From positions 56,544,001-56,608,000 of the forward strand of contig NW_026262679.1 of assembly GCF_021869535.1 (NCBI RefSeq): DNA of 64,000 nucleotides. Direction: 5' to 3'. Made by a program: the position numbers and the translations under genes. Source of the stretch: Mytilus californianus (taxonomy: Eukaryota). The notes under the pieces were generated by a model, which was not told where the DNA came from, searched no databases, and saw only the letters and a list, made by a program, of their open reading frames with translations. This document shows, piece by piece, positions 5,446 to 58,099 of the stretch; within the stretch, counting starts at the first letter, position 1, and every line of letters begins with the position of its first letter.

Positions 5446-8400
5446 GTAATGCATGCATCTTTACTTTATTTATCATGATAAAAATAATAAGATATAAAGC
5501 CAATGAGACAAATCTTCGCTAGATGATGTTAAGGTTAAGGACATATTTTACGTTCTCGTTAGATTTTAAATCACCTTAAAGTAAATTAATGTTCTTTTCA
5601 AGTTGATTCTAAAAGATTTTATTGGCACTCCGGCACAAACTGAGCGATAGATCTAGAGGACACAATAAATACATATTGATAGAAAAGTTAACAAATTGAA
5701 AAAAATAACAATATGGTAGATGAATTCGTGGTGAAATATTTTGGAATATATTTTGATCGTAATTAATGGATATCTCGATTTGTTATAAACAATATGAGAT
5801 GACGTGTTTCGCACAACGGACAATGCATGAGCATCTTGCTTATCTGCATGTCACGTCTAGATAATAAAAAAAAACAACCTGTAAAGTTCAGACACTATTG
5901 CATTAATGAGGCATCCAAATAATTATAATTATCAAATGTAAAAGATACTGATTTTTTATGACTATTCTCTGCATTTAAGTTGAACATATTTTGTATCCAT
6001 GATAGGACAAAATTCATTAAATTGGATGGCTTACTGTCATACGATCAGAAAGCCAGTTACCACATTATCCGGCATTACAATGTATGTAAAATCAACTTCT
6101 ATCGATAATTATACGGAAGTGATAAATGAAACCAATGTTGTCTTTGTTTGTTACGCGTAAATCAAAAAGTATTAATTGATGTGCCCAATGATACAATTTT
6201 AAACACTTATAGACAGTTCTCCACAGAACGACCCTGATACAGAAATTAGAAGAACGGAGGAATTAATTAAAGAAAAGGAGAAATCCATCGAAGGTCTTAA
6301 CGGTAAATTATTTTTATTCTTAAAAGTGCATTTACATGTACATATCATCATTCAACCTCATAACATTGCTATTCAGTTATGAATGAAATACAATTAACTC
6401 GGCCTGAAGTTCATACAATCCTACTGATTAACTACATGTATCAACTTTTGATGTTTAATGGTTTTGTACACAATTGTTTCTTATATTTTGTATTGCACAC
6501 CTTTCAAATATCCCCCACCCCTCAGAAAATTAAATGGTCACCCATTTAATTGAGAAAAAAAATACTGAAAATAAATCAATAGTTTTCACTCTTCATTCCC
6601 GGAACTTATTGTAGTTACTACACATATCATTAAATGATTACTGTAAACCAACTAATTTTCGCGAGCTATGTATTATCGCAACTTTTGCGGGTAGAAAAAT
6701 AACGCGATTTTAATCGTCGCGATTATGTCAAACTTGTATCTTTCCTTATTTGAATACATCAAGTAAATTTGAAAATCGCGAAACTAAATCGCCGCGTAGT
6801 GGTATAGAAAGGGCTCAACACGAAATATAGTATCCCCGAAAATAAGTTGGTTTATAGTACTCTGAATTTCCTTACAAGACAATCTATTATCTGTAAAAAT
6901 TAAAATAAGAACTACCGATATATACATGTGTCAATAACATTTGATTTTTTATTTTCTCCAGAAGACATAATAAAAGCTCATGAAAAATTGAGGACTGTTG
7001 AAGAAAGCACAATATCAAAACAGAAAGAATTTAAATCGTTATCAGGTAAGATAATACTACAATATGGAGATGTGGTATGATTGCCAATGAGACAATTATC
7101 CACTTAAGTTCAAATAAAGTGGATGTAAGCAGTTTTAGGCAACCGTACGGCCTTCAATAATGAAAATAACCCATACCGTAAAGTCGGCTATAAAAGGCCC
7201 CAACATGAAAAATATGAAACAATTCAGACGAGAAAACTAACGGCCTAATTCATAACAAAACAATTTACGAACAACAAATATGACAGACATGAACCAACAA
7301 TATCCACTGAACTACAGGCTCCTGACTTGGGACTGACGCATAAAGAATGTGGCTTGGTTAAACAAGCTCATTTATATATATTTTTTTTTGCCAAACCCTT
7401 TTGGCCATGGTGTTATCTACTTTTCTTCGACTTAATTTGATTTTTGATTTCACCTTGGTATCTTCTGTCTCTCTTTAAGATAGTGATACAAAGTTATAAA
7501 TTGCTTTACTCAAATAAAAGAAGAGGAACAGAAAAATTCTTCAACAATTATTGGTATATTGATGAGGATTACACCATTTTTATTGTCAAACGAAAATCAA
7601 TTGGTCTATTTTAGATTAACATTTTTTTCCAAATAAATGTAATTGCACGTGCTCAACATGACAACATTACAACAAGATATAATAATATTCAAAATGATTG
7701 CTCGTGTTAAACCTCTACCGAGAAAAGCAATACTATTTGTTTCTTCATAGTCTGCTTTAAACCCATTTTCCGTGATTTTTCATTCTGTATGTTTGTAAGG
7801 GGGGAGTGTATGAGAGGCATTTACATACTCTCCCATCGGTTAACATTTTGATTCATTACAATTTTACTATATTTTATAAATAAATGTGTATGTTTATCGT
7901 CTTTGTTTTCAGATAAGGTAAAAACACAAGAGAGTTCATTGAAGTCATGTAATGACCAATTAGTCAGTGCTAAAACAGTACTTACCCAAACCACTGAAAG
8001 ACACAAACGAGTAGCAGACGAGCTTGGTAACTGACGAAATTATTTATTTGATATACGAATCTTATGTTATGAATATTAAATCAGAATAATAGTTTTATGC
8101 TTTGATTTTAACATTCGGAGACCAACAAAAAAATAGAAGTTACAAATTTTGTCTTTCTTTTTTAACATCGCAGCGGTCCTGTTAAAGTTTCATTTTTCAT
8201 TCCAATGTTATGAATATTAAATCAGAATAATAGTTTTATGCTTTGATTTTAACATTCGGAGACCAACAAAAATATGGAAGTTACAAATTTTGTCTTTCTT
8301 TTTTAATATCGCAGCAGGTGGTCCTGTTAGAGTTTCATTTTTCATTCCAATGTTATGAATATTAAATCAGAATAAAAGTTTTATGCTTTGATTTTAACAT

Positions 8401-20400: not shown

Positions 20401-23400
20401 GGAACCAACTGTGCTTCTCCCCTTGCTCCATGTTTGTTAGTAGAATCACTATACATACATGGAATGTCCAGAAGAATAAAAAAGAGCGATCGTTATCCCT
20501 TAATTTCACGATTCGCTATGTAACTGATGATGTCCCTGTACTAAATAAAAGATTTATATCAAAATTGATACTATTCCAAGGCTTCTTGATTTGCTTTTTT
20601 GATGGCTGCTGCTTACAAGGAAGATATTTAACCGAGAGTTCCTAATGGTAAAATCGATGTCCTCTCTTCGGACGCTTACGGAGGATATCATCATTTGTTG
20701 ACCGTTATAAACATTTTGTGAAACATATGATCACGAATGAAACAAAACAAAATACACTTCGGACGTACCAAATTTATGAAGTGTTCTTTTCGTTGTATAT
20801 CACTGGGTCGGTACAACTGCTGGTAGACTAGTCCCCGAATGTATCATCATCTCCGTAATTAATGCTTCTTAAAGACATTACTTATAGCATAGCTTTCTTA
20901 AAATTTTCGTTGATAAATTTATGAATTATCTTAAGAATCTAAGATTTCTATTCCCTAAGAAAATATTTACCTATAGAAAAGCTCGATTTATGTTTTAGTT
21001 GTCTTTGGCTTTGAATTAGCTTTTCTTAGATAGCTATGTTTGTCTTTTGTCTTTATTGTAGTCATCTGTGTGTTCACGTGCTTCGTGCCAGTTTGATGAG
21101 TTTACCGAATTATCAACAATTCTTACAGTTTGTTCTTATGTTGTGTTGTTACACAACTGCCCCAGATAAGAGTGAAGGTTTGGTGCTCAAAAACATGTTT
21201 AACCCACCCACAAACAAATTTTATCATATCGGGAACTTTGATTGCCGACTTACGGTAAGGGGTTTTGCTCATTGTAGAAGGTCGTACGGTGATTTTGACT
21301 TTGGTTAATAGTTGTCTCATTGGAAATCATATCACCTCTCCTACTGTTACATTGTATATTGGCTATTCATTTTAGGTCTCTTTTCGGTCTTATATCTCCC
21401 GTATTAAGTAAATTTACATTCTTGGCTTTCAATTGTTTTGGATTCGGAATCCCTTATGAAGGTAATTCCTGAATAGATCTTCGGTTTCACCAAATTTTTA
21501 AAGTGATATTGTTTATTTTCCATCTTTCGAAGCCGCAGTCCTGAGTGTCATTCATAGATTGATATTTTATTGCATCATTGAATGTGACTTTTAACCGGAG
21601 TTAACTTGGCATAAGCTACTCGGCTGGCGCCATGAATGGAAATGCTTATGTTTTCGGGGTACGAGAGTTTAATCCCGGTTTTTTGGTTTAATAGCTTCAT
21701 GATACTTAATCTTAAGCTTTCTGTTCTGTGGACAATTTCCCCGCTCTTCTAAAGATTTGTTTTTGCTTTAACTATGATGTCGTCTGTTGTTTTCTGATTG
21801 ATGGTTTTGATTGTTTATTTTCTTTTAGTTTCCTATATAATATAATGTGTCGTAGATAGTGCAGAAAACCTTCCGTTTGTCATATTACAATCTCGTTTTC
21901 TGAATTTCTTGTTCATGACTTTCGGGACCACTGATAACGATTAATGTTTTCAATACATTTCGATTTGTACGGTGCACCAAGGTAGGTGTAACTAGTGAGA
22001 AAAACCTGCTTGCCTTTCCGTAATTCACCCAGATAAAGATTCATATTGCTCAATCTTTAATAGTAGATCAAAGGATAACAGGAATTCATAAAAAATATTT
22101 GATAGTACAACAAACTACAAACACACCAACGCCTGACGCCTCTGGACAAAAAAAAACGAACAAACTAAAACCAATAACAATTTTGTCAATATAAAGAACT
22201 ATAAATAACTGTCAAACAAGTGGGAGGTTTAGCTAGCTATAAAACCAGGTTTAACCTACCATTTTTTTTTTTTGGAAAATGGCTGTACCATGTCAGGAAT
22301 ATGGCAGCTGTTCCGTTGATTGATAGCGTTTGATTTTGTCGGTTTTTATGAACTTTCCCTTTTTGAATGTGCCTTAGAGTTCGGTATTTGTGTTATACTT
22401 TTTTGATACAGACACGGAATATTTACTTTCAAATGTTTTATGAACTAATTTTTGTCATTTATCTTTTGCCCATGTATAGTGTTGTCGTTCTTCTTGTGTA
22501 TTTACTTCAATTTTAATTACCTTGTTATTTGTTTGGTTTATATTTTCTTATAAAAATTCTTGTACAAAAAATAATCGCCTAGTAAACATACTTTTAATTT
22601 ACCTGATATACATTTCAAGGCAAAATCTAATTTTTCTAAGTTTCTGTTGATTTATTTAATAGGGAAAGTGCAATATCTAGAAACAGCTTTAACAGAGTCT
22701 CAAAGGGAATTATGGGAAGCAAGATCTCTTTTCCGTCCACAGACAGGTAGGCTTACACTATGTGTAAGGAGTTTATTTCTAATAATTAAAGATCATTCAG
22801 AAAACGATATTTTTAGTCCGTTGTTTGGTTGACTTTCTATCTAACGCCGCAGCTGTCTTTTGTGGTACTCTGACATAACGTTATGTGGTTTAACTTTTAT
22901 GCCCCACCTAGAGGGATTATGTTTTCGGTCTGTGCGTCCGTCCGTTCGTTCGTTCGTCCGTCTGTCCCTCTTCAGGTTAAAGTTTTTGGTAAAGGTAGAT
23001 TTTGATGAAGTTAAAGTCCAATCAACTTGAAACTAAGTACACATGTTACCTATGATATGATCTGTCTATGAGTTTTGACCGCAATTGCACGGTTCACTGA
23101 ACATAGAAAATGATAGTGCGAGTGTGGCATCCGTGTACTTAGACACGTTCTTTGTTACTTGATGATATTTTGTCTTTACATGTCAGATATGGTTTTGACA
23201 TTACTTAGATGTTTTGATATAACTCAAATATGGTATAGTCATTACTTAATGATATTTCAATATTACATGATATTGTTTCGTTTTGACTTGATATGGTTTT
23301 GTCATTACTTATAGTAATATGATTTCAACACTATTTAATGTGGTTTTGTCATTAGGCAATGTAGGTTAACGTATTGTTATTGTTTCATTGTATGATGTGG

Positions 23401-29228: not shown

Positions 29229-29464
29229 ATCAAAAGAGTTAAGGGCAAAATCAAAATCGCAGTTGAAAAGCATTTAAAACCGAGTTTCGAATAAAGGCAA
29301 CAGTAGTATACCGCTATTCGAAATTCATAAATCGATTGAGAAAAAAACAAATCCGGGTTACAAACTAAAACTGAGGGAAACACATCAAATATAAGAGGAG
29401 AACATCAACACAACAGAAACACAACACTAAAAAGCAACACACACAGAAACGAACTATAATATAA

Positions 29465-29565
29465 CAATGGCCATTTTCCTGACTTGGTACAGGTCATTTT
29501 AAGAAGAAATAGTTGGTTGAACCTGGTTTTGTGGCTAGCCAAACCTCCCGCTTTTATGGCAATGT
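29465..29565 (-). ncRNA. Divergent twister-like motif (family C)
   Basis: Minus: gccat aaaa gcgg GAGGT ttggctagccac...ggttCAAccaact...CCTG TACCAAGT CAGG A aa atggc; ACC/GGT complementarity for T1. Confidence 0.4.
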
Positions 29566-29689
29566 TAAATATAACATTAAAATGACAAGATTACATGACA
29601 GGACTACAATACAAATAAATGGGAGAACATACAGAACAGAGACACACACAAATAATAGCTATCAAAAGGTACCACGCTTATAATTTAAT

Positions 29690-39640: not shown

Positions 39641-40075
39641 CTCTCGACTGTTAATGACGTCTTTCACTAAATCCATTGGATGTTGGATGTGTACTGATTG
39701 ATATTTTAGTCTTAGACACATGATTTTTTATTAATTGTTATTGGCTTTCAGTAACTGCGAGTACTCGCAGGTCTGTACTTTGTGTCTTTTGAGTTTTGTT
39801 AGGGTTTTTTATATGCTCTGTATCAATCTGATGAGTTAAGCCCTTTTCGACTGATTTTTATAGTGTATTATTATGTTGTTCTGTTACACACCTCTGCCAC
39901 AGATTAGGGACGGGAGGGGGTTGTTAGGGGAAGGGGTGGGTTGGCGCCAGGAAACATATTTAACCCCCCACCACCACCCCACCCCACCCCCCCCCCCCCC
40001 ACCCCCCCCCCCCCCCCACATTCTGTATGTGCCTGTTCCAAGTCAGGAGCCTGTAATTCAGTGGTTGTAGTTATG
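39260..40075 (+). mobile_element. PLE family A 3' end: RT C-terminus, trailer, twister-like motif with poly-C expansion
   Basis: KFFHRY...GIAHSHFYGD...LILKGYQFN, then trailer collinear with 56100-56730 and 57964-58100. Confidence 0.8.
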
Positions 40076-40789: not shown

Positions 40790-41660
40790 GGTACTACAAT
40801 CTGTCGATACCTATAATTTGGCATTGCACAATGTCATGTTTTTCTCTGACTGTTAATGACGTCTTTACAATAAATCCATTGGATGTTGGATGTGTACTGA
40901 TTGATATTTAATCTTAGATACAAGATTTTTTTTTTATTTAGCTGTAAAGTACTCTCAGATCTGCACTTTGTGTTTTTTGTTGTTGTTTGGGATGTATAAA
41001 TGCTCTGCCACGTCCGGTCTTCTCTTTTTTTTTTCCTTTTTAGATGTTTTTTTCTGCTTTGTATCGATCTGATAAGTTAAACCCTTTTCAACTGTTTTTT
41101 TTATATTTTGTTCTTATGGTGTGATGTAACACCACTGTCCCAGGTTAGGGAAGGGACTGAGCGCTAACAAACATGACTTTTGATTACTGTGAATACTTTT
41201 ATTTTCATGGGCAAATTTCGTTGTTTTGGCAAAGTCCGCATAAATTCCTTGGAAAATTTGTAATTCGTTTAACATTTAAATTAGTGGTTCCCCTGTACCC
41301 ACGAAATCCACGAAAATTGGTATCCAACGAATAATATTGAATCCACAGTAACTCCGCCACATTCTTTAAATATGTGCCTGTCCCATGTCAGGAGCCTGTA
41401 GTTCAGTGGTTGTCGTTGGTTCATGTCTGTCATATTTGTTTTTCGTAAATTGTTTTATTATGAATTAGGCCGTTAGTTTTCTCAATTGAACTGTTTCATA
41501 TTTTAATGTCGAGGCCTTTTAAAACCGACTATACGGTATGGGTTTTTCTCATTGTTGAAGGCCGTACGGTTGCCTATAATTGCTAACATGTACTTCATTT
41601 GAACTAAGTGGATAGTTGTCTCATTGGCAATCATACCACATTTCCTTATTTTTATATGAC
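40790..41660 (+). mobile_element. PLE family A 3' trailer interrupted by a MITE
   Basis: Collinear with 56415-56730 plus 57964-58355. Confidence 0.85.
41185..41350. mobile_element. MITE with TA target duplication
   Basis: TA-ctgtgaat ... atccacag-TA; flanks rejoin into the trailer sequence t-TA-actccgccac. Confidence 0.8.
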
Positions 41661-45347: not shown

Positions 45348-45939
45348 TGAAAGTATTGTGGGGTATCTATGGATAACTGTTTCAATGGTGTACACGTCGA
45401 ATTTATATAAAAAAAAGTACTAAAACATAAAAACAGAAACGCCCCCTCGAAAAAATTATATACTAAGTGTCACATATTGATCTATAATAAAATTACAAAA
45501 CAACATCATGAAAAAAGTATCAATACCCAGCTGCAAAAGACTTATGATACACTGTATATACAAATAAAAACTATGATAATAATACTAAGGGAAAATATTT
45601 TTTACAAAAATGCATAGTCATGTTTTACATCATTTAAAATGTTCATATGATTATAAAGTATCTATTTGTGAACTCTTCAAAATAATAATAATCTTGAACT
45701 TAATAATACAAATCAACGATAAAACAAGAATTATCATTAAAGTTTACACGTTTACCTAACAATAAAATTATTTTCATTTACCTGTGTTTAAAGTTATTGC
45801 AAATGGCTGATATTTTTGTTCGAGCATATTGTTTTTCTTTAATTGTTTAACATTATATACCGATATAACATGTTACTTTTATTATTCTTCCCTTAGTTTA
45901 TTTATTTTGTATTTACATTGTATCATAGGTCAAATTTAT

Positions 45940-46392
45940 TTGTTCAGTGTATGTTCAATGGTGTTAATATGTCCTTTGATTGAGCAAAGCTATTTCAGTT
46001 GATATATTATAGTGTGTCTTTCTATGTTGTGATGTTACACTATTGTTTCAGAAAAAGGGTGAAGGTTTGGTACCATTAAAACGTTTAAACCCGCTGCATT
46101 TGTTTGTACCTGTCCTAAGTCAGGAATCTGATGTTCAGTAGATGTCGTTTGTTGATGTGGTTCATAAGTGTTTCTCGTTTCTCGTTTTTTATATAGATAA
46201 GACCGTTGTTTTTCCCGTTTGAATGGTTTTACACTAGTAATTTTTGGGGCCCTTTATAGCTTACTGTTCGGTGTGAGCTAAGGCTCAGTGTTGAAGACCG
46301 TACTGTGACCTATAATGGTTTACTTTTATAAATTTTTACTTGGATGGAGAGCTGTCTCATTGGCACTCATACCACATCTTCTTATATCTAAT
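45940..46392 (+). mobile_element. Retroelement 3' trailer, family B
   Basis: Same layout as the family A trailer and ends gtctcattggcactcataccacatctt; a 3' tip copy lies at 51785-51840. Confidence 0.75.
46040..46141 (+). ncRNA. Type-P5-like twister ribozyme candidate, core intact
   Basis: P5 ctattg/cagtag and tcaga/tctga; P2 GGGT/ACCC; GAAGG; U-A-A 46086-46088; GC; P3 TGCA/TGTA; P4 CCTG/CAGG; L4 TCCTAAGT; T1 CCT/AGG; no canonical P1. Confidence 0.72.
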
Positions 46393-47409
46393 TCGTTTAA
46401 AAACATCACTAGGGTAAAGGTTACGTAAAAATTCAGTAAGCTTACGTTAACTTCAAAAGTCGATAAGAGAGATTTACATTGTAAAAAAAAATTACTAAAG
46501 CAATACAATAAGTTCTAATTATGCTATGAACAATTTTACGTCTCATAAAACATTTATGGAGTATGTGAGCTAAAAGTGGTTGGGTTTCATTACATTTCAT
46601 TATAGATGTAAATTTGTGTACCGTTGTAAACATTTCAAAACTATCTATTAACCGTTTAGCATTTTGTAATAGTTAAAATCGAATGTCAGAATAGAGCAGA
46701 CAGTTCATCATGAAGTGTATTTCATTTTCTACAGTTTAATTGTCACACAAATTACAAAATCGTTCATTCAAAAGGTATCTGGTGTCTGAAGTATCGTCTC
46801 GTTTCAATAACCACTTCTAAAGAGTGACATTGTTCGTCTTACGGAACGTGGGATGTTACGCTGTATATATTGTTATGTTTTAACATTTCTTTGTATAAGC
46901 GATAAATTCGTAATTATATTCCATTTGCTTGATTTTTGTCATTAAAAAGTTCAGATTGAAATTCACCATTATCTCGAATTGTCAGTTTGTCTTTAATTGG
47001 ATATACTGCTGATTTTAATGACATTTGATAGATTTTATAAAACCAATCACTTGCTTGTGCCATCCTTTCCGACGTCTTCAGGCCCGGTCCGACACCGTTG
47101 TAATTAGTCTGTCATCGTCTATGCGTTTCAACCTACATAATAGACGAATGCATGACAGTTTTTTTTTGTTGAAACATGTAATTAGTCCCAAATCGCCACG
47201 CACTGCTGAGTTTGATGTTCGTTTTCCTACAGCTAGAAATAATTTTCATGCTTTGTTTTGAACGTTGTAAATCACACCATATTGTCTTGTTCCCCATATA
47301 CCACTTCCATAGAAGAAGAAAGGCTAAATTTGAATTCATACAACTTAAAGAAAACACGATGAGTCATACATTCACTACTTATAAATTTTCCGTATAGGAC
47401 GCCTAGTGC

Positions 47410-50800: not shown

Positions 50801-51125
50801 TGAGCGTTCACAAGCGTGTTTAAACCCGCCACATTCTTTATGTGCCTGTCCCAAGTCAGGAGCCTGTAGTTCAGTGGTTGTCATTTGTTTATGTCTGTCA
50901 TATTTGTTTTTCGTAAATTGTTTTGTTATAAATTAGGCAGACAGTTTTCTCAATTGAATTGTTTCATATTTTTCATGTCGGCACCTTTTATAGCCGACTA
51001 TACGGTATGGGGTTTTCTCATGGTTGAAGGCCTTACGGTTGCCTATAATTGCTTACATTCACTTCATTTGAACTTTGGTGGTTAGTTATCTCATTTGCAA
51101 TCATAACACATCTCCTTATTTTTAT
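50801..51125 (+). mobile_element. PLE family A trailer, 5'-truncated, intact 3' half of the twister-like motif
   Basis: gttTAA ACCC GC CACAT-tcttt-ATGTG CCTG TCCCAAGT CAGG A gcctg. Confidence 0.85.
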
Positions 51126-51939
51126 AAAATTAAAATTTGTATCGTCTTTTAAAATCTTGTGACTATTTAAAGAAAAATAATATGAAAAACCAAATATTGA
51201 AAAAAAAAATATGTTTGGTTAATATTTTACAATAAATCTTTAAAAAAAATACCCCTTTTGACAATATTTTAGTTAAGAACTGAGACAGGTTCAATATGCC
51301 AGTCCTTTAGAGGACCCCCTTACCCCTAATGTTGTTTTAGTCTAATTATCAAATGTTGGAGAAACGTGAACACACCAATCAAGGAAAGGAAGGAAATTTA
51401 ACACTACCAAAGTATATTTTGACGTGAAAGTTCAGCATGCTAAAGACCATGAACGCCAAATATTAGTCATTGTTTGGAAAAAAAATGTAATTTTTGAATT
51501 TGACAAATTTTAATGGTTGTAAGAAAATATTCATTGTTGTCATTGTCTTTCTACATTTTTGTCCATAGGTCCTAGAAAAGTACTTATGACCAACACATGT
51601 CTCATAGTAGTATGATTATATACTGTAGCCTTTAATCGTCTCGTTTTAAGATATATTCTGTATTTACCTTTTCTAAATATAACAAAATAGGTGCCTTAGA
51701 ATCACCAAATGTTAGTCATTGTTTGAAAAAAATATATATATATAATTTTTGAATTTGACAAATTTAAATGGTTCAAAGGAAATTGTAACTTGGATGGAGA
51801 GTTGTCTCATTGGCACTCATACCACATCTTCCTATATCTACCTCATGGTAATTTGAGTTGCGTGATCATTAGTTTAAAAACACATCGCAGTATTTGATTA
51901 ATACTTTATTAAGCACAAGTTACACCCATGAGAGGGCCA

Positions 51940-53857: not shown

Positions 53858-56734
53858 CAAGTTGAACTCAGTATATTTCATATTTATTATGATGTAAAAG
53901 TATTTGAAGAAAAATGATGAAAAAGATTACGCAAATGTTAAAACAAACGGTTGAACACAATCATACAAGGTTTTTCCTTATTCAAAACCCTAATCATCCA
54001 TCAGTTAAACTGTCCCACTTTATGTGTTCATCCTTTATCTTTAGATTTGTAAATATCGAAAAGGAAAAATAAGTGTGACACGTGTATCTATGAAGGATAC
54101 ACATTTTCAGAAAACTTAATGTCGATAAGACAGTATTTCAATTTAACTATTTTATTCAATTTAAACCGGTATATGTCCGCGTAGAAACCGCAATATAATA
54201 ACTAACCAATAAACTATGAAAATTCACCTTTCTATAACAACATCAACTGTCCTTAACAGCTTTATTGTCCTGTTATTTAATACATTAGATAAGTCCGTTT
54301 ACACAATATATCGAATCAATAAATCGGTAAACTAGCAAGTAAAGTATTTTCTGGAAGTCAAAGGCCTGGTTAATTAATAATATTAAATAGGATTTTCAAT
54401 TTCTCTGGACATAAACAAACACATGTATTAACGTTAACGAGCATATTGCATTATTTTTTAAATCTTTTAATTTACTTTTGTTTTTAAGAAAATTGTCGAA
54501 CTTCTATTATGTGTTTGTTATTGTGTAAATGAATTACGCGATAGTTTTAATATATCATTCATTGTAATGATTTGCAAATGCTGAATTCAAAATTTAAGAG
54601 TAGTGCATGTCAAAACTTCAGTGTTTTCTTTTTTATTATAATGATCAATTATCATGAACAAATTACAATAGCTCATTTTATCCGCCATTTTATATTCCTA
54701 TTCATTTTGATTATTTGTACACCAAACAGAGAAAAATGATTAAGTCATTGGTAAAATGTCTGTTAAGGACGCTGTTGATCAATTGCAAAATTGTTGGCAC
54801 ATTTGAAATTTCATCACAAATCAGATTCTGTAATTACAAATTTAGTAGGCGTATGAAGCACGGTGTCACGTTTCGGTGATGTTATCCAATAGCAAATGCA
54901 TGGGTTATTCATCATCTTAAAGTATATTACAAAACATGAAGTTTTCTTTTTATTTACGTTGTCTAAATATAATTCATAATTCACCTTGATCTAAAACAAA
55001 TAGACATTTCCTGAAAACATTGTTTTCGAATAGAAATTGAAGGTATATGTATAAGTTTAATTGTATATAATCTTCAGGGTAGAACTTCAGATTTCTGAAT
55101 AAAATACCGATGTTTTTACACAGCCTACTGCTTGTGTACTGACGTAAAAATTGTCTAAGATCTGATGCTTTCGTACTAATTCTAAATCATACGTTTCAGA
55201 TATTTCATTTAGCTAAAACCTGTATCTCCTTTAATTTATTCAAACGCGAACAAGTAGGACACATATCAGTGTGGATAGTATGTTTAGATGTCTGACAGTG
55301 TATTCTGATAAAAGTGTTTTCAATGTAATTTTTTCTATCTTTTACTGTGTTATTTAAAGTGCTTTAATCTCCCTTTAACTATTTTTGTTGTATGGATGCT
55401 CCTTCAATATGTATTGCTTGTACTGACAGTTTTAATCATCTTACATTACAGTTCATATGTAGATGTGAGTTGTCTGTTTACACATCTTTATTTCACAAAG
55501 AAAGCATTTGCATAGTAATGAACTGAGCTCAATGCAAAGCACTTTAATAATACATTTAGATAGAGACCTCAATCCAGTAACACACGGTTCTTTATTATCT
55601 CGGCCCTTCATTACCACCGGTAACATTCATGTCAAACTACATGGAACTGAGGTCCTGAAAAAGACATGTCAATTAATTGTAATATGTGTACCTTGGATAA
55701 AACTTGTACAAAGATGTCATTTAAATATTCAGTACCCAGCAAGTAGTTGTCGCTTCAATGAAAAGAGAGAGGGAGGAGTTTTGATAATTTTGTCCTGACT
55801 TTTCCGTTTTCAGAAGCAGAAGCTAATCTGTTAGTATTGAGTCAAATTGTGGTGACAGTAAGAAACTCAAACAATGCCTAGTAATTCCTCACATTAACTA
55901 AAACGTGCCAGTTTTATGTAATGCAATCCAAACTATCCTGTACCTTCAAAAGATGAGATGATGAGATACAATACTTTTAAACTTCAATTAATTCAGACAA
56001 ATCGCTATGTCCGTGTCTGTTATGACGTTTTTGATTTTAACGAACGTAATCTATGTAGTCAGGAAAATTATTAAGCCAGGGATTTCGTTACCACAAATTA
56101 CTTAAAACCTTTACTAAATTCTTACATAGATATAAAGATTTGGTTTTGAAGTTTGATTGTACCTGTAGAAAACTTATTTCAAACGGGATAGCACATCCTC
56201 ATTTTTACGGAGATGTTGTTTACCGTGCCCGGAAATTTAAAAACGATCCTGGTAAACTTAACGATCCTTTAAATAAACTTATTCTAAAAGGTTACCAATG
56301 CAACACAGTAATTAGATCTTTGAATATTGTTTTTATTGGTATTAATATTGATTTTGTTATCAGTAAATTAAAAGCAAACTAAAGATTATTGTTATATACA
56401 TATGCACATTCATGGATCTACAATCTGTCGATACCTGTATCTTGGCATTGCACAATGTCATGTTTTTCTCTGACTGTTTATGACGTCTTTAACTAAATCC
56501 ATTGGATGTTGGATGTGAACTGATTGATAATTTAGTCTTAGATGCATGATTTTTTTATTAGTTGTTAGTGGCTTTGAACTAGCTGTAAGTAACTGCGAGT
56601 ACTCTCAGATCTGTACTTAGTGTCTTTTTGTTGTTTGGATATACAAGTACCCAGCCACGTCCACTCTGTGTTTTTGTTAGATGTATTTCTATTTGTATCC
56701 ATCTGATGAGTTAAGCCTTTTTCAACTGATTTTT

Positions 56735-57963
56735 GTCGAGCCTGCGACTTTTGTCGCAGAAAGCTTGACATAGGGAATGTGATCCGGCGGCGGCGGCGGC
56801 GGCAACGGCGGCGGCGGCGGCGGCAACGGCGGCGGCGGCGTTAGCTAACTTCTTACAAGCTTTATATTTTAGAAGGTGTTAAACCTGGATGCTTCATACT
56901 TTTTATATAGATGCCTTATGTTACGAAGTTTCCGTCTGTCACATGTCCATTGTCCTTGACCTCATTTTCATGGTTCAGTTACTACTTGAAAAAAAAGTTA
57001 AGATTTTTTGTAATGTTAATTTCTCTCTTATTATGAGTAATAGGATAACTATATTTGGTATGTGCGTACCTTGCAAGGTCCTCATGCCCGTCAGACAGTT
57101 TTCACTTGACCTCGACCTCATTTGATGGATCAGTGAACAAGGTTAAGTTTTGGTGATCAAGTCCATATCTCAGATACTATAAGCAATAGGTCTAGTATAT
57201 TCGGTGTATGGAAGGACTGTAAGGTGTACATGTCCAACTGGCAGGTGTCATTTGACCTTGACCTCATTTTTCATGGTTCAGTGGTTATAGTTAAGTTTTT
57301 GTGTTTTGGCCTGTTTTTCTTATACTGTATGCAATAGGTCTACTATATTTGGTGTATGGAATGATTGTAAGGTGTACATGTCTAGCTAGCAGGTGTCATC
57401 TGACCTTGACTTCATTTTCATGGTTCAGTGGTCAAAGTTAAGTTTTTGAGTTTTGGTCTTTTTTTCTAATACTATATGCAATAGGTCAACTATATTTGGT
57501 GTATGGAAATATTTTATGATGTACATGTCAGTCTCATTGGTTTTATTTGACCTTGACCTCATTTTCACGGTTCATTGCTCAGTGTTAAATTTTTGTGTTT
57601 TGGTCTGTTTTTCTTAAACAATAAGCAATAGGTCAACTATGTTTGTTGTATGCAAGGATTGTCAGCTGTACATGTCTGCCTGCCGTGGTTCATCTGACCT
57701 TGACCTCATTTTCATAGTTCATTGGTCAATGTTTAGTTTTCTTAGTTGAGAAACTTTAAGCAATAGGTCAACTATATTTAGTGTATTGAATGATTGTAAG
57801 GTGTACATGTATTTCTTGTTCGGTTTATATGACCTTGACCTCATTTTCTTAGATCATGTTAAGTTTTTGTGATAGTTGTAGTAAAGTTTTATATTTAGGA
57901 CTATCATCATAATATCAATGATTAGTAAAGAAGGCGGGACATTTCAGCGTGTGCACTCTTGTT
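56735..57963 (+). mobile_element. Complete Helentron-type element with (GGC)n microsatellite and ~148-bp internal repeats
   Basis: tgtcgagcct / aggcgggaca subterminal repeats, gcgacttttgtcgc 5' hairpin, about 7 gaccttgacctcattttc units, inserted in a T run without TSD. Confidence 0.88.
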
Positions 57964-57991: not shown

Positions 57992-58099
57992 ACCACTGTC
58001 CCAGGTTAGGGGAGGATTGGGATCCCGCTAACATGTTTGACCCCGCCACATTCTGTATGTATGTGCCTGTCCCAAGTCAGGAGCCTGTAATTCAGTGGT
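57992..58099 (+). ncRNA. Type-P5-like twister motif (family A), A>G at the scissile position
   Basis: P5 accactg/cagtggt and caggt/gcctg; A GGG GAGGA; T-G-A 58038-58040; CCCC GC; P3 CACAT/ATGTG; P4 CCTG/CAGG; L4 TCCCAAGT. Confidence 0.68.

What the first reader, a model, noticed from the sequence alone, without database searches (positions are those of the whole stretch)
46040..46141. Intact-looking permuted (type-P5) twister ribozyme in a retroelement 3' trailer
Seen: the segment folds as P5 (ctattg 46040-45 / cagtag 46136-41; tcaga / tctga), P2 (GGGT 46057-60 / ACCC 46089-92), GAAGG 46061-65, U-A-A 46086-88, GC 46093-94, P3 (TGCA/TGTA), P4 (CCTG/CAGG) and loop TCCTAAGT. Pseudoknot T1 is CCT:AGG and T2 is GC:GT. 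Established: this is the twister consensus (UAA-P2-GC-P3-P4-UCCCAAGC loop ... GAGGG) opened at P5; the matching general base (G46061) and general acid (A46087) are both present. Against the family A copy at 57992-58099 the stems change compensatorily: P3 closing pair T-A vs C-G, P5 caga/tctg vs cagg/cctg and ctattg/cagtag vs ccactg/cagtgg, P2 A-T vs C-G, T1 T-A vs C-G. Inference: self-cleavage between 46086 and 46087. Caveat: there is no canonical P1, only a side hairpin and a palindrome, although P1-less mini-twisters are known to cleave. The comparison with published twisters is from memory.
Basis: partly seen in the sequence, partly recalled or inferred. Interest (0 to 1): 0.9.

Follow-up and report, generated by a model that had tools for sequence, protein, structure and literature searches.

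The report
Twister ribozyme fold in retroelement tail
The flagged 102 bases have the full fold of a circularly permuted twister self-cutting RNA, kept by compensating mutations, in the tail of a very abundant Penelope-like jumping gene of a mollusc, a group published as lacking ribozymes; cutting itself is not shown.

Summary
Window 46040-46141 (+) folds as a type-P5 (circularly permuted) twister: P5, P2, P3, P4, both pseudoknots, U-A-A at 46086-88 and GAAGG at 46061-65.

It is not a chance look-alike. The exact core pattern occurs 6383 times in this 1.65 Gb genome against 0 for the reversed control. On 16 copies from several lineages and two other assemblies, 24 of 30 pairs, including T1 and T2, change on both sides (shuffles 13.0 ± 1.9).

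Rfam does not detect this copy. A sister lineage matches the whole Twister-P5 model, but below threshold (23 bits, E 0.004).

The copy is a 650-bp, 5'-truncated 3' tail of a retroelement whose ORF ends in a Penelope-like RT. It is probably Naiad clade, which is published as lacking hammerheads. Homologous elements elsewhere carry SECIS, then this motif, then a partial tandem repeat.

P1 is non-canonical. Two perfect palindromes (46068-75, 46079-86) lie between GAAGG and the cleavage site, which hints at action as a dimer, as in Penelope hammerheads.

Self-cleavage is untested, and RNA-seq showed no pile-up of ends at 46086/46087.

The scan had already reached the same reading on other DNA of this genome.

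The parts
45745..46390 (+). 5'-truncated 3' tail (about 650 bp) of a retroelement, family 'C46'. It has a sharp 3' end (...CTTCTTATATCTA) and no poly(A).
   Evidence: Of 29 other loci, 23 end within 46387-46394 and 17 exactly at 46390. Their 5' ends are staggered, and many extend further upstream than this copy. There are at least 754 near-identical candidates in the genome.
46040..46052 (+). P5, 5' strands: P5b ctattg 46040-45 and P5a tcaga 46048-52.
   Evidence: P5 pairs covary across lineages. Lineage D has a 9-bp P5 of entirely different sequence.
46053..46060 (+). L2 3' strand AAAA (46053-56), then P2 3' strand GGGT (46057-60).
   Evidence: The canonical equivalent is (G/A)UAAA followed by GGAG.
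46061..46065 (+). L1 3' strand GAAGG (canonical GAGGG). Positions 46063-65 form pseudoknot T1 with 46114-16.
   Evidence: The G-to-A change at 46063 is matched by a C-to-U change at 46116. In the 95-row alignment this T1 pair is G-C 39 times and A-U 17 times.
46068..46075 (+). Palindrome X, TGGTACCA. It is a P1-like hairpin or dimerisation helix directly after L1.
   Evidence: A perfect palindrome stands at this place in nearly all lineages, with different sequences. RNAcofold pairs X with X in a domain-swapped dimer.
46079..46086 (+). Palindrome Y, AAACGTTT. It ends at the U that precedes the predicted scissile bond.
   Evidence: Other lineages have AACATGTT, AAACATGTTT, AAACTAGTTT or AAACCGGTTT here.
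46086..46094 (+). L1 5' strand U-A-A (46086-88), with predicted cleavage between 46086 and 46087. Then P2 5' strand ACCC (46089-92) and L2 GC (46093-94, pseudoknot T2).
   Evidence: Same order as Rfam Twister-P5 and the table in PMC8501958. Cleavage itself is inferred, not shown.
46095..46108 (+). P3 hairpin: TGCA, loop tttgtt, TGTA. Position 46107 is T where the family consensus has C, giving one G.U pair.
   Evidence: and the table of other letters. All four P3 pairs show changes on both sides.
46109..46124 (+). P4 (CCTG with CAGG) and loop L4 TCCTAAGT (canonical GUCCCAAGC).
   Evidence: In other assemblies P4 becomes AUCG/CGAU and ACCG/CGGU. A partial Rfam twister-P1 hit covers the same part of copy A.
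46127..46141 (+). P5, 3' strands: tctga 46127-31 and cagtag 46136-41.
57993..58099 (+). Family A copy of the same motif. This copy reads U-G-A where the family consensus has U-A-A, so it is probably inactive.
   Evidence: At least 1503 candidates at 97-99% identity.
56083..56382 (+). Broken C-terminal end of the retroelement ORF that precedes the family A tail.
   Evidence: 945 protein relatives. These include RT fragments with PKLHK, IPMG and YLDD motifs. The ESM Atlas places them with HTH_animal/RVT_1/GIY-YIG clusters.
29461..29567 (-). Decayed copy of lineage E. It has L1 GAGGU with loop UACCAAGU, so the third T1 pair is U-A.
   Evidence: The same pairing of variants occurs in window 22206-22311, L032 and L049.

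Best explanation
Window 46040-46141 (+) is a near-consensus copy of a type-P5, circularly permuted twister-class ribozyme. The motif is built into the 3' UTR of a very abundant Penelope-like retroelement, probably of the Naiad clade.

Shown:
- The RNA fold (P5, P2, P3, P4, T1, T2) has been kept by selection across sublineages and across assemblies.
- The core nucleotides stand where twisters have them.

Inferred:
- Transcripts that carry the motif cut themselves between U46086 and A46087.
- Cutting would use the twister mechanism, leaving a 2',3'-cyclic phosphate and a 5'-OH.
- Cutting may need two copies to pair through the two palindromes that replace a canonical P1. That could occur in the partial tandem (pLTR) transcripts typical of these elements, as proposed for Penelope hammerheads.

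This particular copy is a promoter-less, 5'-truncated tail. It would act only if transcribed by read-through.

My confidence in the fold and its homology to twister is about 0.85. My confidence in catalysis is about 0.5. The figure of 0.55 given for this explanation covers the whole statement.
For: Core order and sequence:
- They match canonical twister-P1 copies of this same genome (72 bits, above the cut-off of 67.2).
- They match the published domain table.
- Rfam Twister-P5 aligns sister lineage D over the whole model 1-58 in the same register (23 bits, E 0.0039).

Covariation on 95 copies:
- 87.8% of cells are paired, against 74.9% in shuffles.
- The covariation score is 0.347, against 0.152 in shuffles (0 of 500 reach it) and at most 0.063 with partners slid.

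Covariation on 16 rows balanced by lineage and assembly:
- 24 of 30 pairs change on both sides (shuffles 13.0 ± 1.9).
- The score is 0.50, against 0.18 in shuffles.

Pseudoknots, which were not part of the aligning model, also covary:
- T1 is G-C, A-U (C46) or U-A (lineage E).
- T2 is G.U, A-U or U.G, and G-C in the canonical type-P1 twisters.

Other assemblies: elements with a homologous RT keep the motif after the ORF, with a different P4, P3 and P5a.

Strand: G.U pairs and the weak fold of the opposite strand fix the + strand as the RNA strand.

Palindromes X and Y persist with changing sequence.

Cofold dimers are 8 to 17 kcal/mol better than two monomers.

Penelope hammerheads with a palindromic helix III are proposed to act as dimers (PMC4209133).
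Against: - No Rfam twister hit for this copy, even at E up to 10. Twister-P5 found nothing genome-wide, though only 79 of about 36,000 candidates were scored.
- P1 is not adjacent to the cleavage site. P1-less twisters are reported to cut only inefficiently (PMC8501958, citing Kosutic 2015).
- The third T1 pair is mismatched in abundant lineages: A.C in family A and U.U in L073 and L075.
- RNA-seq shows low depth on both strands and no place where molecules begin or end at 46086/46087.
- Inserted copies run 300 nt past the motif to a sharp 3' end, so the template RNAs were not cut there.
- Family B spread to at least 2180 candidate copies without the 5' half of the motif.
- Fold stability is not above shuffles.
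Confidence: 0.55

Rival explanations
1. The motif descends from a twister and keeps its fold, but it no longer cuts. The structured RNA serves another role in the 3' UTR, such as recognition by the element's reverse transcriptase, packaging or dimerisation of the RNA.
For: - Templates of inserted copies extend past the motif uncut.
- No read ends pile up at the site.
- P1 is displaced and a T1 pair is mismatched in abundant lineages.
- Rfam scores are below threshold.
- Retroelement RTs often recognise 3' UTR structures (general knowledge).
Against: The unpaired catalytic-core letters (U-A-A, the G-A of L1, GC, the A-A-G of L4) are kept in all healthy lineages and in the other assemblies. A mere protein-binding scaffold need not keep exactly the twister active-site letters.
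Confidence: 0.3
2. Whatever the family does, this copy is an inert relic. It is a 5'-truncated tail without a promoter that merely carries the sequence.
For: - The copy starts at 45745, well inside the element.
- No ORF of 100 aa or more lies between 42500 and 46500.
- Read depth is low and comes from both strands.
Against: It differs from the family consensus in the core only by one G.U pair in P3, so it would still fold if transcribed. This statement is compatible with the best explanation rather than opposed to it.
Confidence: 0.7
3. The resemblance to twister is a chance property of a repeat, and the apparent covariation only reflects the relatedness of the copies.
For: - Copies are related, so shuffle controls overstate significance, as the tool's own caveat says.
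- The alignment was fitted to the nested helices.
- Thermodynamic z-scores are weak.
Against: - The slid-partner controls, which keep relatedness, collapse (at most 0.076 against 0.50).
- The pseudoknots were not in the aligning model, yet they covary.
- P4, P3 and P5 are rebuilt with other letters in other assemblies.
- An independent curated model (RF02684) aligns lineage D end to end.
- Canonical twisters exist in the same genome.
Confidence: 0.03

Closest known systems
Type-P5 twister ribozyme (Rfam RF02684; Roth et al. 2014)
   Same: The order of parts is the same: P2 3' strand, GAGGG, P1 region, UAA, P2, GC, P3, P4 with a GUCCCAAGY loop, and an open P5. Both pseudoknots can form. Lineage D aligns to the full Rfam model.
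   Different: - Scores are below Rfam's gathering threshold, and this copy is not detected at all.
- P1 is a short palindromic hairpin, separated from the cleavage site by a second palindrome of 8-10 nt.
- L1 reads GAAGG and L4 reads UCCUAAGU, which is a compensated T1 pair.
- T2 has G.U.
- The host is an animal retroelement.
Twister variants at the 5' end of Perere-3 (RTE) non-LTR retrotransposons of Schistosoma mansoni (PMC8501958)
   Same: It is a twister-class ribozyme embedded in a retrotransposon, with a weak or variable P1 and a very high copy number.
   Different: Those are type P1 and lie at the 5' end, where cleavage defines the 5' end of the element's RNA. This motif is type P5 and lies about 300 nt from the 3' end of a Penelope-like element. 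Inserted copies do not begin or end at its cleavage site.
Minimal hammerhead ribozymes in the pLTRs of Penelope-like elements (PMC4209133; Lunse et al. 2017)
   Same: - The genomic niche is the same: the terminal region or pseudo-LTR of a PLE.
- There are many fast-evolving sublineages full of compensatory changes.
- The closing helix is destabilised and palindromic, which suggests action as a dimer in tandem transcripts.
   Different: It belongs to a different ribozyme class (twister, not hammerhead). Naiad PLEs were reported to lack canonical hammerheads (PMC8557442), and no paper in the library links twister with Naiad.

Membership tests
Twister ribozyme, type P5 (RF02684) | L1 5' strand U-A-A, holding the scissile U-A, directly before P2. 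| tested here: met
   T-A-A at 46086-88 followed by ACCC. The family consensus agrees.
Twister ribozyme, type P5 (RF02684) | P2 helix of 4 bp, followed on the 5' strand by GC and on the 3' strand by GAGGG. | tested here: met
   GGGU pairs with ACCC, giving 4 standard pairs. GC stands at 46093-94. L1 reads GAAGG, one letter off and compensated in T1.
Twister ribozyme, type P5 (RF02684) | P4 hairpin with loop GUCCCAAGC, forming pseudoknot T1 with L1 and T2 with GC. | tested here: met
   The loop is UCCUAAGU. T1 has 3 standard pairs. T2 has G.U plus C-G. Both pseudoknots covary across lineages.
Twister ribozyme, type P5 (RF02684) | P1 helix ending next to the cleavage site. | tested here: not met
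   Only a 2-4 bp palindromic hairpin (46068-75) follows L1. A second palindrome (46079-86) lies between it and the U-A step.
Twister ribozyme, type P5 (RF02684) | Score at or above Rfam's gathering threshold (37.6 bits). | tested here: not met
   There is no hit for this copy at E up to 10. Sister lineage D reaches 23.0 bits, E 0.0039.
Twister ribozyme, type P5 (RF02684) | Open ends in P5, that is, the circular permutation. | tested here: met
   P5 strands flank the core. P5 is rebuilt with other letters in lineages D and E and in L073 and L075.
Twister ribozyme, type P5 (RF02684) | Site-specific, Mg-dependent self-cleavage. | not testable with these tools
   RNA-seq raw reads show no excess of ends at 46086/46087, but depth is only 4-17 and the reads are mostly 90-95% alike.
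Penelope-like element, Naiad clade | PLE-type reverse transcriptase at the C-terminal end of the ORF, with no EN domain after it. | tested here: inconclusive
   - The ORF tail upstream of the motif has relatives with PKLHK, IPMG and YLDD motifs and a VPADKAANN (DKG-like) motif.
- The Atlas neighbours carry HTH_animal, RVT_1 and GIY-YIG.
- Pfam gives no hit that passes its threshold.
Penelope-like element, Naiad clade | N-terminal GIY-YIG endonuclease with a CxC linker. | tested here: inconclusive
   It was not seen. All copies and proteins I could read are 5'-truncated or chimeric.
Penelope-like element, Naiad clade | Partial tandem (pseudo-LTR) arrangement, 5' truncation, no poly(A), very high copy number in bivalves, and selenoprotein-coding with SECIS in clams. 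| tested here: met
   - L073 has the ORF, then SECIS (39 bits, above 35), then the motif, then a truncated second copy with SECIS and the motif.
- There is a 5'-truncation gradient and a sharp 3' end here.
- There are thousands of copies.
Penelope-like element, Naiad clade | No canonical hammerhead. | tested here: met
   No Rfam family reaches its gathering score anywhere in the 64-kb window. Only a half core, CTGATGAG, stands at 56703-10, like the 'HHR_half_core' noted in PMC8557442.

The most novel reading that the evidence does not exclude
Naiad Penelope-like elements, published as the ribozyme-less clade, do carry a ribozyme. It would be a type-P5 twister whose P1 has been replaced by two palindromes, so that it cuts only when two copies pair. 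The two copies could be tandem pLTRs or two separate RNAs. This would be the first dimer-dependent twister, and a case of one ribozyme class replacing another in the same niche of a retroelement.
Probability: 0.4. Interest if true: 0.8.

Novelty: new variant of a known kind. Interest (0 to 1): 0.65.

Why it matters
All other Penelope-like clades carry hammerheads whose role is still unclear. Naiads dominate bivalve genomes and were described as having none.

A conserved twister in the same position would mean that a self-cleaving RNA is needed in that niche whatever its class. It would extend twister biology from RTE 5' ends to PLE 3' ends.

It would also offer a natural twister with a split or palindromic P1, in which to test regulation by dimerisation.

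Finally, it shows that the curated Rfam models miss tens of thousands of twister-fold copies in a single animal genome.

Tried and rejected
Rfam:
- The gathering scan of the whole window found nothing.
- The E-value scan around the motif gave only chance microRNA and histone hits.
- A genome-wide Twister-P5 search found nothing, but it scored few of its candidates.

tRNA-derived SINE idea (GTTCAGTGG resembles an A box): ARAGORN finds no tRNA and there is no B box. Rejected.

Copies beginning at the cleavage site: family B starts 20 nt upstream, inside palindrome X, and C46 5' ends are scattered. This gives no support for 5' processing at the site.

RNA-seq: no ends pile up. The dip in depth over 46064-46115 cannot be interpreted, because most reads are 90-95% alike and only partly laid.

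Divergence of core versus flanks: the core looks less diverged, but the loci were picked by similarity to the core, so the comparison is biased. I set it aside.

Pfam on the ORF tail and on longer relatives gave no usable domain. The 253-aa ORF in L045 and L056 looks like flanking host sequence, not part of the element.

Contigs encoding P0099 and P0001 were too short to show context. L076 had no motif.

The papers by Roth 2014, Ren 2014 and Kosutic 2015 are not held. Which G is the general base, and how active P1-less twisters are, therefore rest on PMC8501958 and on memory.

Full report
**Observation.**
- P5 has two parts: 46040-45 with 46136-41, and 46048-52 with 46127-31.
- An A-rich L2 strand lies at 46053-56.
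- P2 is GGGU 46057-60 with ACCC 46089-92.
- L1 is GAAGG at 46061-65 and U-A-A at 46086-88.
- GC stands at 46093-94.
- P3 is 46095-98 with 46105-08.
- P4 is 46109-12 with 46121-24, closing the loop UCCUAAGU at 46113-20.
- T1 (46063-65 with 46114-16) and T2 (46093-94 with 46119-20) can both form.

An unconstrained MFE fold gives the same four nested helices. Its energy is not unusual (z -1.6). The opposite strand folds no better than shuffles.

**Is it a twister?** Rfam finds nothing at gathering level in the window. It finds no twister around this copy even at E up to 10. Copy A gives only a partial type-P1 hit over P3-P4 (17.4 bits, E 0.4).

Three independent references nevertheless put the motif in the twister class.
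- This genome holds canonical type-P1 twisters above Rfam's cut-off (72 bits against 67.2). They read P1, UAA, CUCC, GC, P3, P4 with loop GUCCCAAGC, AUAAA, GGAG, GAGGG, P1.
- The published domain table gives the same blocks (PMC8501958).
- Rfam's Twister-P5 model aligns a sister lineage (D, L030:902-969, minus strand) over its whole length 1-58. The alignment reads GGGG, GAGGG, 22 nt, UAA, CCCC, GC, P3, P4. It scores 23.0 bits with E 0.0039, below the gathering score of 37.6.

The flagged copy has the same blocks in the same order. It has three pair-preserving differences, which explains why the model misses it.

**A family, not a single sequence.** The loop motif occurs 8 times in the window, against 0.01 expected.
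- The flagged copy belongs to family C46, with at least 754 candidates and best copies 97-99% identical.
- Copy A at 57993-58099 belongs to a second family, with at least 1503 candidates.
- The exact C46 core pattern occurs 6383 times in the genome, against 0 for the reversed control.

Further lineages turned up by chance inside the fetched loci and the window.
- Lineage D has GGGG and GAGGG, a 9-bp P5 of unrelated sequence, and a GCA/UGC P3.
- Lineage E has L1 GAGGU with loop UACCAAGU, and L2 reads AC.
- Several copies are decayed.

The window's C46 copy equals its family consensus in the core, except for one G.U pair in P3 (46107 T where the consensus has C). The window's copy A reads U-G-A where its family consensus has U-A-A. 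That copy has therefore lost the cleavage-site adenine.

**Covariation.** I built a covariance model (R1) from six copies, using only the nested helices. I used it to align 95 matches.

With T1 and T2 added by hand, one search gives:
- 87.8% of cells paired, against 74.9% in shuffles.
- A covariation score of 0.347, against 0.152 in shuffles (0 of 500 reach it).
- A score of at most 0.063 when the partners are slid.

A smaller set of 16 rows, balanced over lineages and including two other assemblies, gives:
- 89.7% of cells paired.
- 24 of 30 pairs with changes on both sides (shuffles 13.0 ± 1.9).
- A score of 0.50, against 0.18 in shuffles and at most 0.076 when slid.

The pseudoknots were not in the aligning model, yet they vary coherently.
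- The first T1 pair is G-C, or A-U in C46.
- The third T1 pair is G-C, or U-A in lineage E. It is mismatched in family A (A.C) and in L073 and L075 (U.U).
- The first T2 pair is G.U here, A-U in lineage E, U.G in L075, and G-C in the canonical type-P1 twisters.

Two caveats apply. Cells are not independent events, and the nested helices were fitted by the model.

**Context.** Twenty-three of the 29 other C46 loci end within 46387-46394, and 17 of them end exactly at 46390. Their 5' ends are staggered, and depth falls steadily going upstream. That is the signature of target-primed reverse transcription with 5' truncation.

In longer copies, an ORF ends about 0.8 kb upstream of the motif (L048). 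The window has a broken version at 56083-56382.
- This ORF tail has 945 relatives.
- The longer relatives carry RT motifs PKLHK, IPMG and YLDD, and a DKG-like VPADKAANN.
- Their Atlas neighbours carry HTH_animal, RVT_1 and GIY-YIG, which is the Penelope-like set.

In another assembly (L073), the homologous gene is followed by a series of features:
- a SECIS element (39 bits, above the threshold of 35);
- the twister-like motif (R1 49.9 bits, E 5e-13);
- a 5'-truncated second copy, again with SECIS and the motif, which is a pseudo-LTR arrangement.

L074, L077 and L075 carry the motif too. Their P4 is rebuilt as AUCG/CGAU or ACCG/CGGU.

Several features fit the Naiad clade as described in PMC8557442:
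- the RT lies at the C-terminal end of the ORF;
- SECIS occurs in clam-like elements;
- copies form partial tandems;
- copy numbers are huge in a mollusc;
- there is only a half hammerhead core (CTGATGAG at 56703-10).

That paper states that Naiads lack canonical hammerheads. I could not see the N-terminal GIY-YIG domain, because every copy I could read is truncated. Clade membership is therefore probable, not proven.

No paper in the library links twister with Naiad. None of the 12 papers that mention both twister and Penelope-like elements appears from its title or abstract to report such a link. I searched three of them for these terms and found none.

**P1 and the palindromes.** Two perfect palindromes lie between L1 and the U-A step: TGGTACCA at 46068-75 and AAACGTTT at 46079-86. 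The same two places hold palindromes in nearly all lineages, but with other letters:
- GGGATCCC with AACATGTT;
- TTGAGATCTCAA with AAACATGTTT;
- TGAGCGCTCA;
- GGCGCC with AAACTAGTTT;
- TGGCTAGCCA;
- AGGTACCT and ATGGCCAT, each with AAACCGGTTT.

The central bases stay self-complementary as well. This points to an intermolecular duplex rather than a hairpin.

RNAcofold predicts domain-swapped homodimers that are 8-17 kcal/mol better than two monomers. This is expected for any palindrome, so it shows plausibility only.

Penelope hammerheads have a short, palindromic helix III and are thought to work as dimers in tandem transcripts (PMC4209133). By analogy, I infer that this twister may need two copies. 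This step is inference.

**What argues against activity.**
- P1 is not adjacent to the site, and P1-less twisters are reported to cut poorly.
- Inserted copies extend 300 nt beyond the motif, so the template RNAs were uncut there.
- Family B spread to at least 2180 candidates with only the 3' half of the motif.
- Raw RNA-seq reads give low depth on both strands and no pile-up of ends at 46086/46087.

**Verdict.** The reading as a type-P5 twister fold in a retroelement 3' tail is supported. Self-cleavage remains to be shown.

Earlier notes of this scan on other DNA of the same genome reach the same reading. I had reached it from my own calls before reading them, and they do not count as independent evidence.

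Noticed in passing
L031-L040 (for example G000:C97:2459714-2459772): Canonical type-P1 twisters (RF03160, up to 72 bits, above the cut-off) sit in another dispersed repeat of this genome. 62 were scored out of a very large candidate set. Their host element was not identified.
   Followed up: partly
window 50801-51130, 7303-7410 (-), 41308-41410: Family B (at least 2180 candidates, 92-95% identity) begins inside palindrome X, 20 nt before the U-A-A. It lacks the P2'/GAGGG half, so it is a half-twister that still amplified.
   Followed up: partly
window 56737-57959: The family A tail is split by a 1.2-kb insertion. The insertion holds a (CGG)n microsatellite (56785-56840) and about five copies of a 147-bp tandem repeat (57107-57848). 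About five other loci share the same insertion.
   Followed up: partly
window 56703-56710: CTGATGAG, the first half of a hammerhead core, stands in the conserved 3' UTR upstream of the twister. No GAAA half lies nearby. It resembles the 'HHR_half_core' cases mentioned for Naiads in PMC8557442.
   Followed up: no
window 39965-40017: In one copy, the stretch from P1 to P2 is replaced by a long C-rich tract of about 50 nt.
   Followed up: no
L073 7174-7241 and 8019-8086: SECIS elements (39 and 34.5 bits) lie directly after the RT ORF of the homologous element in another assembly. This fits the selenoprotein-coding Naiads of clams.
   Followed up: partly
window 58037-58039: The window's family A copy reads T-G-A where its family consensus has T-A-A, so the cleavage-site adenine is lost.
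   Followed up: yes
I confirmed only the decayed twister-like copy of lineage E at 29461-29567 (-), not the hammerheads.
   Followed up: partly
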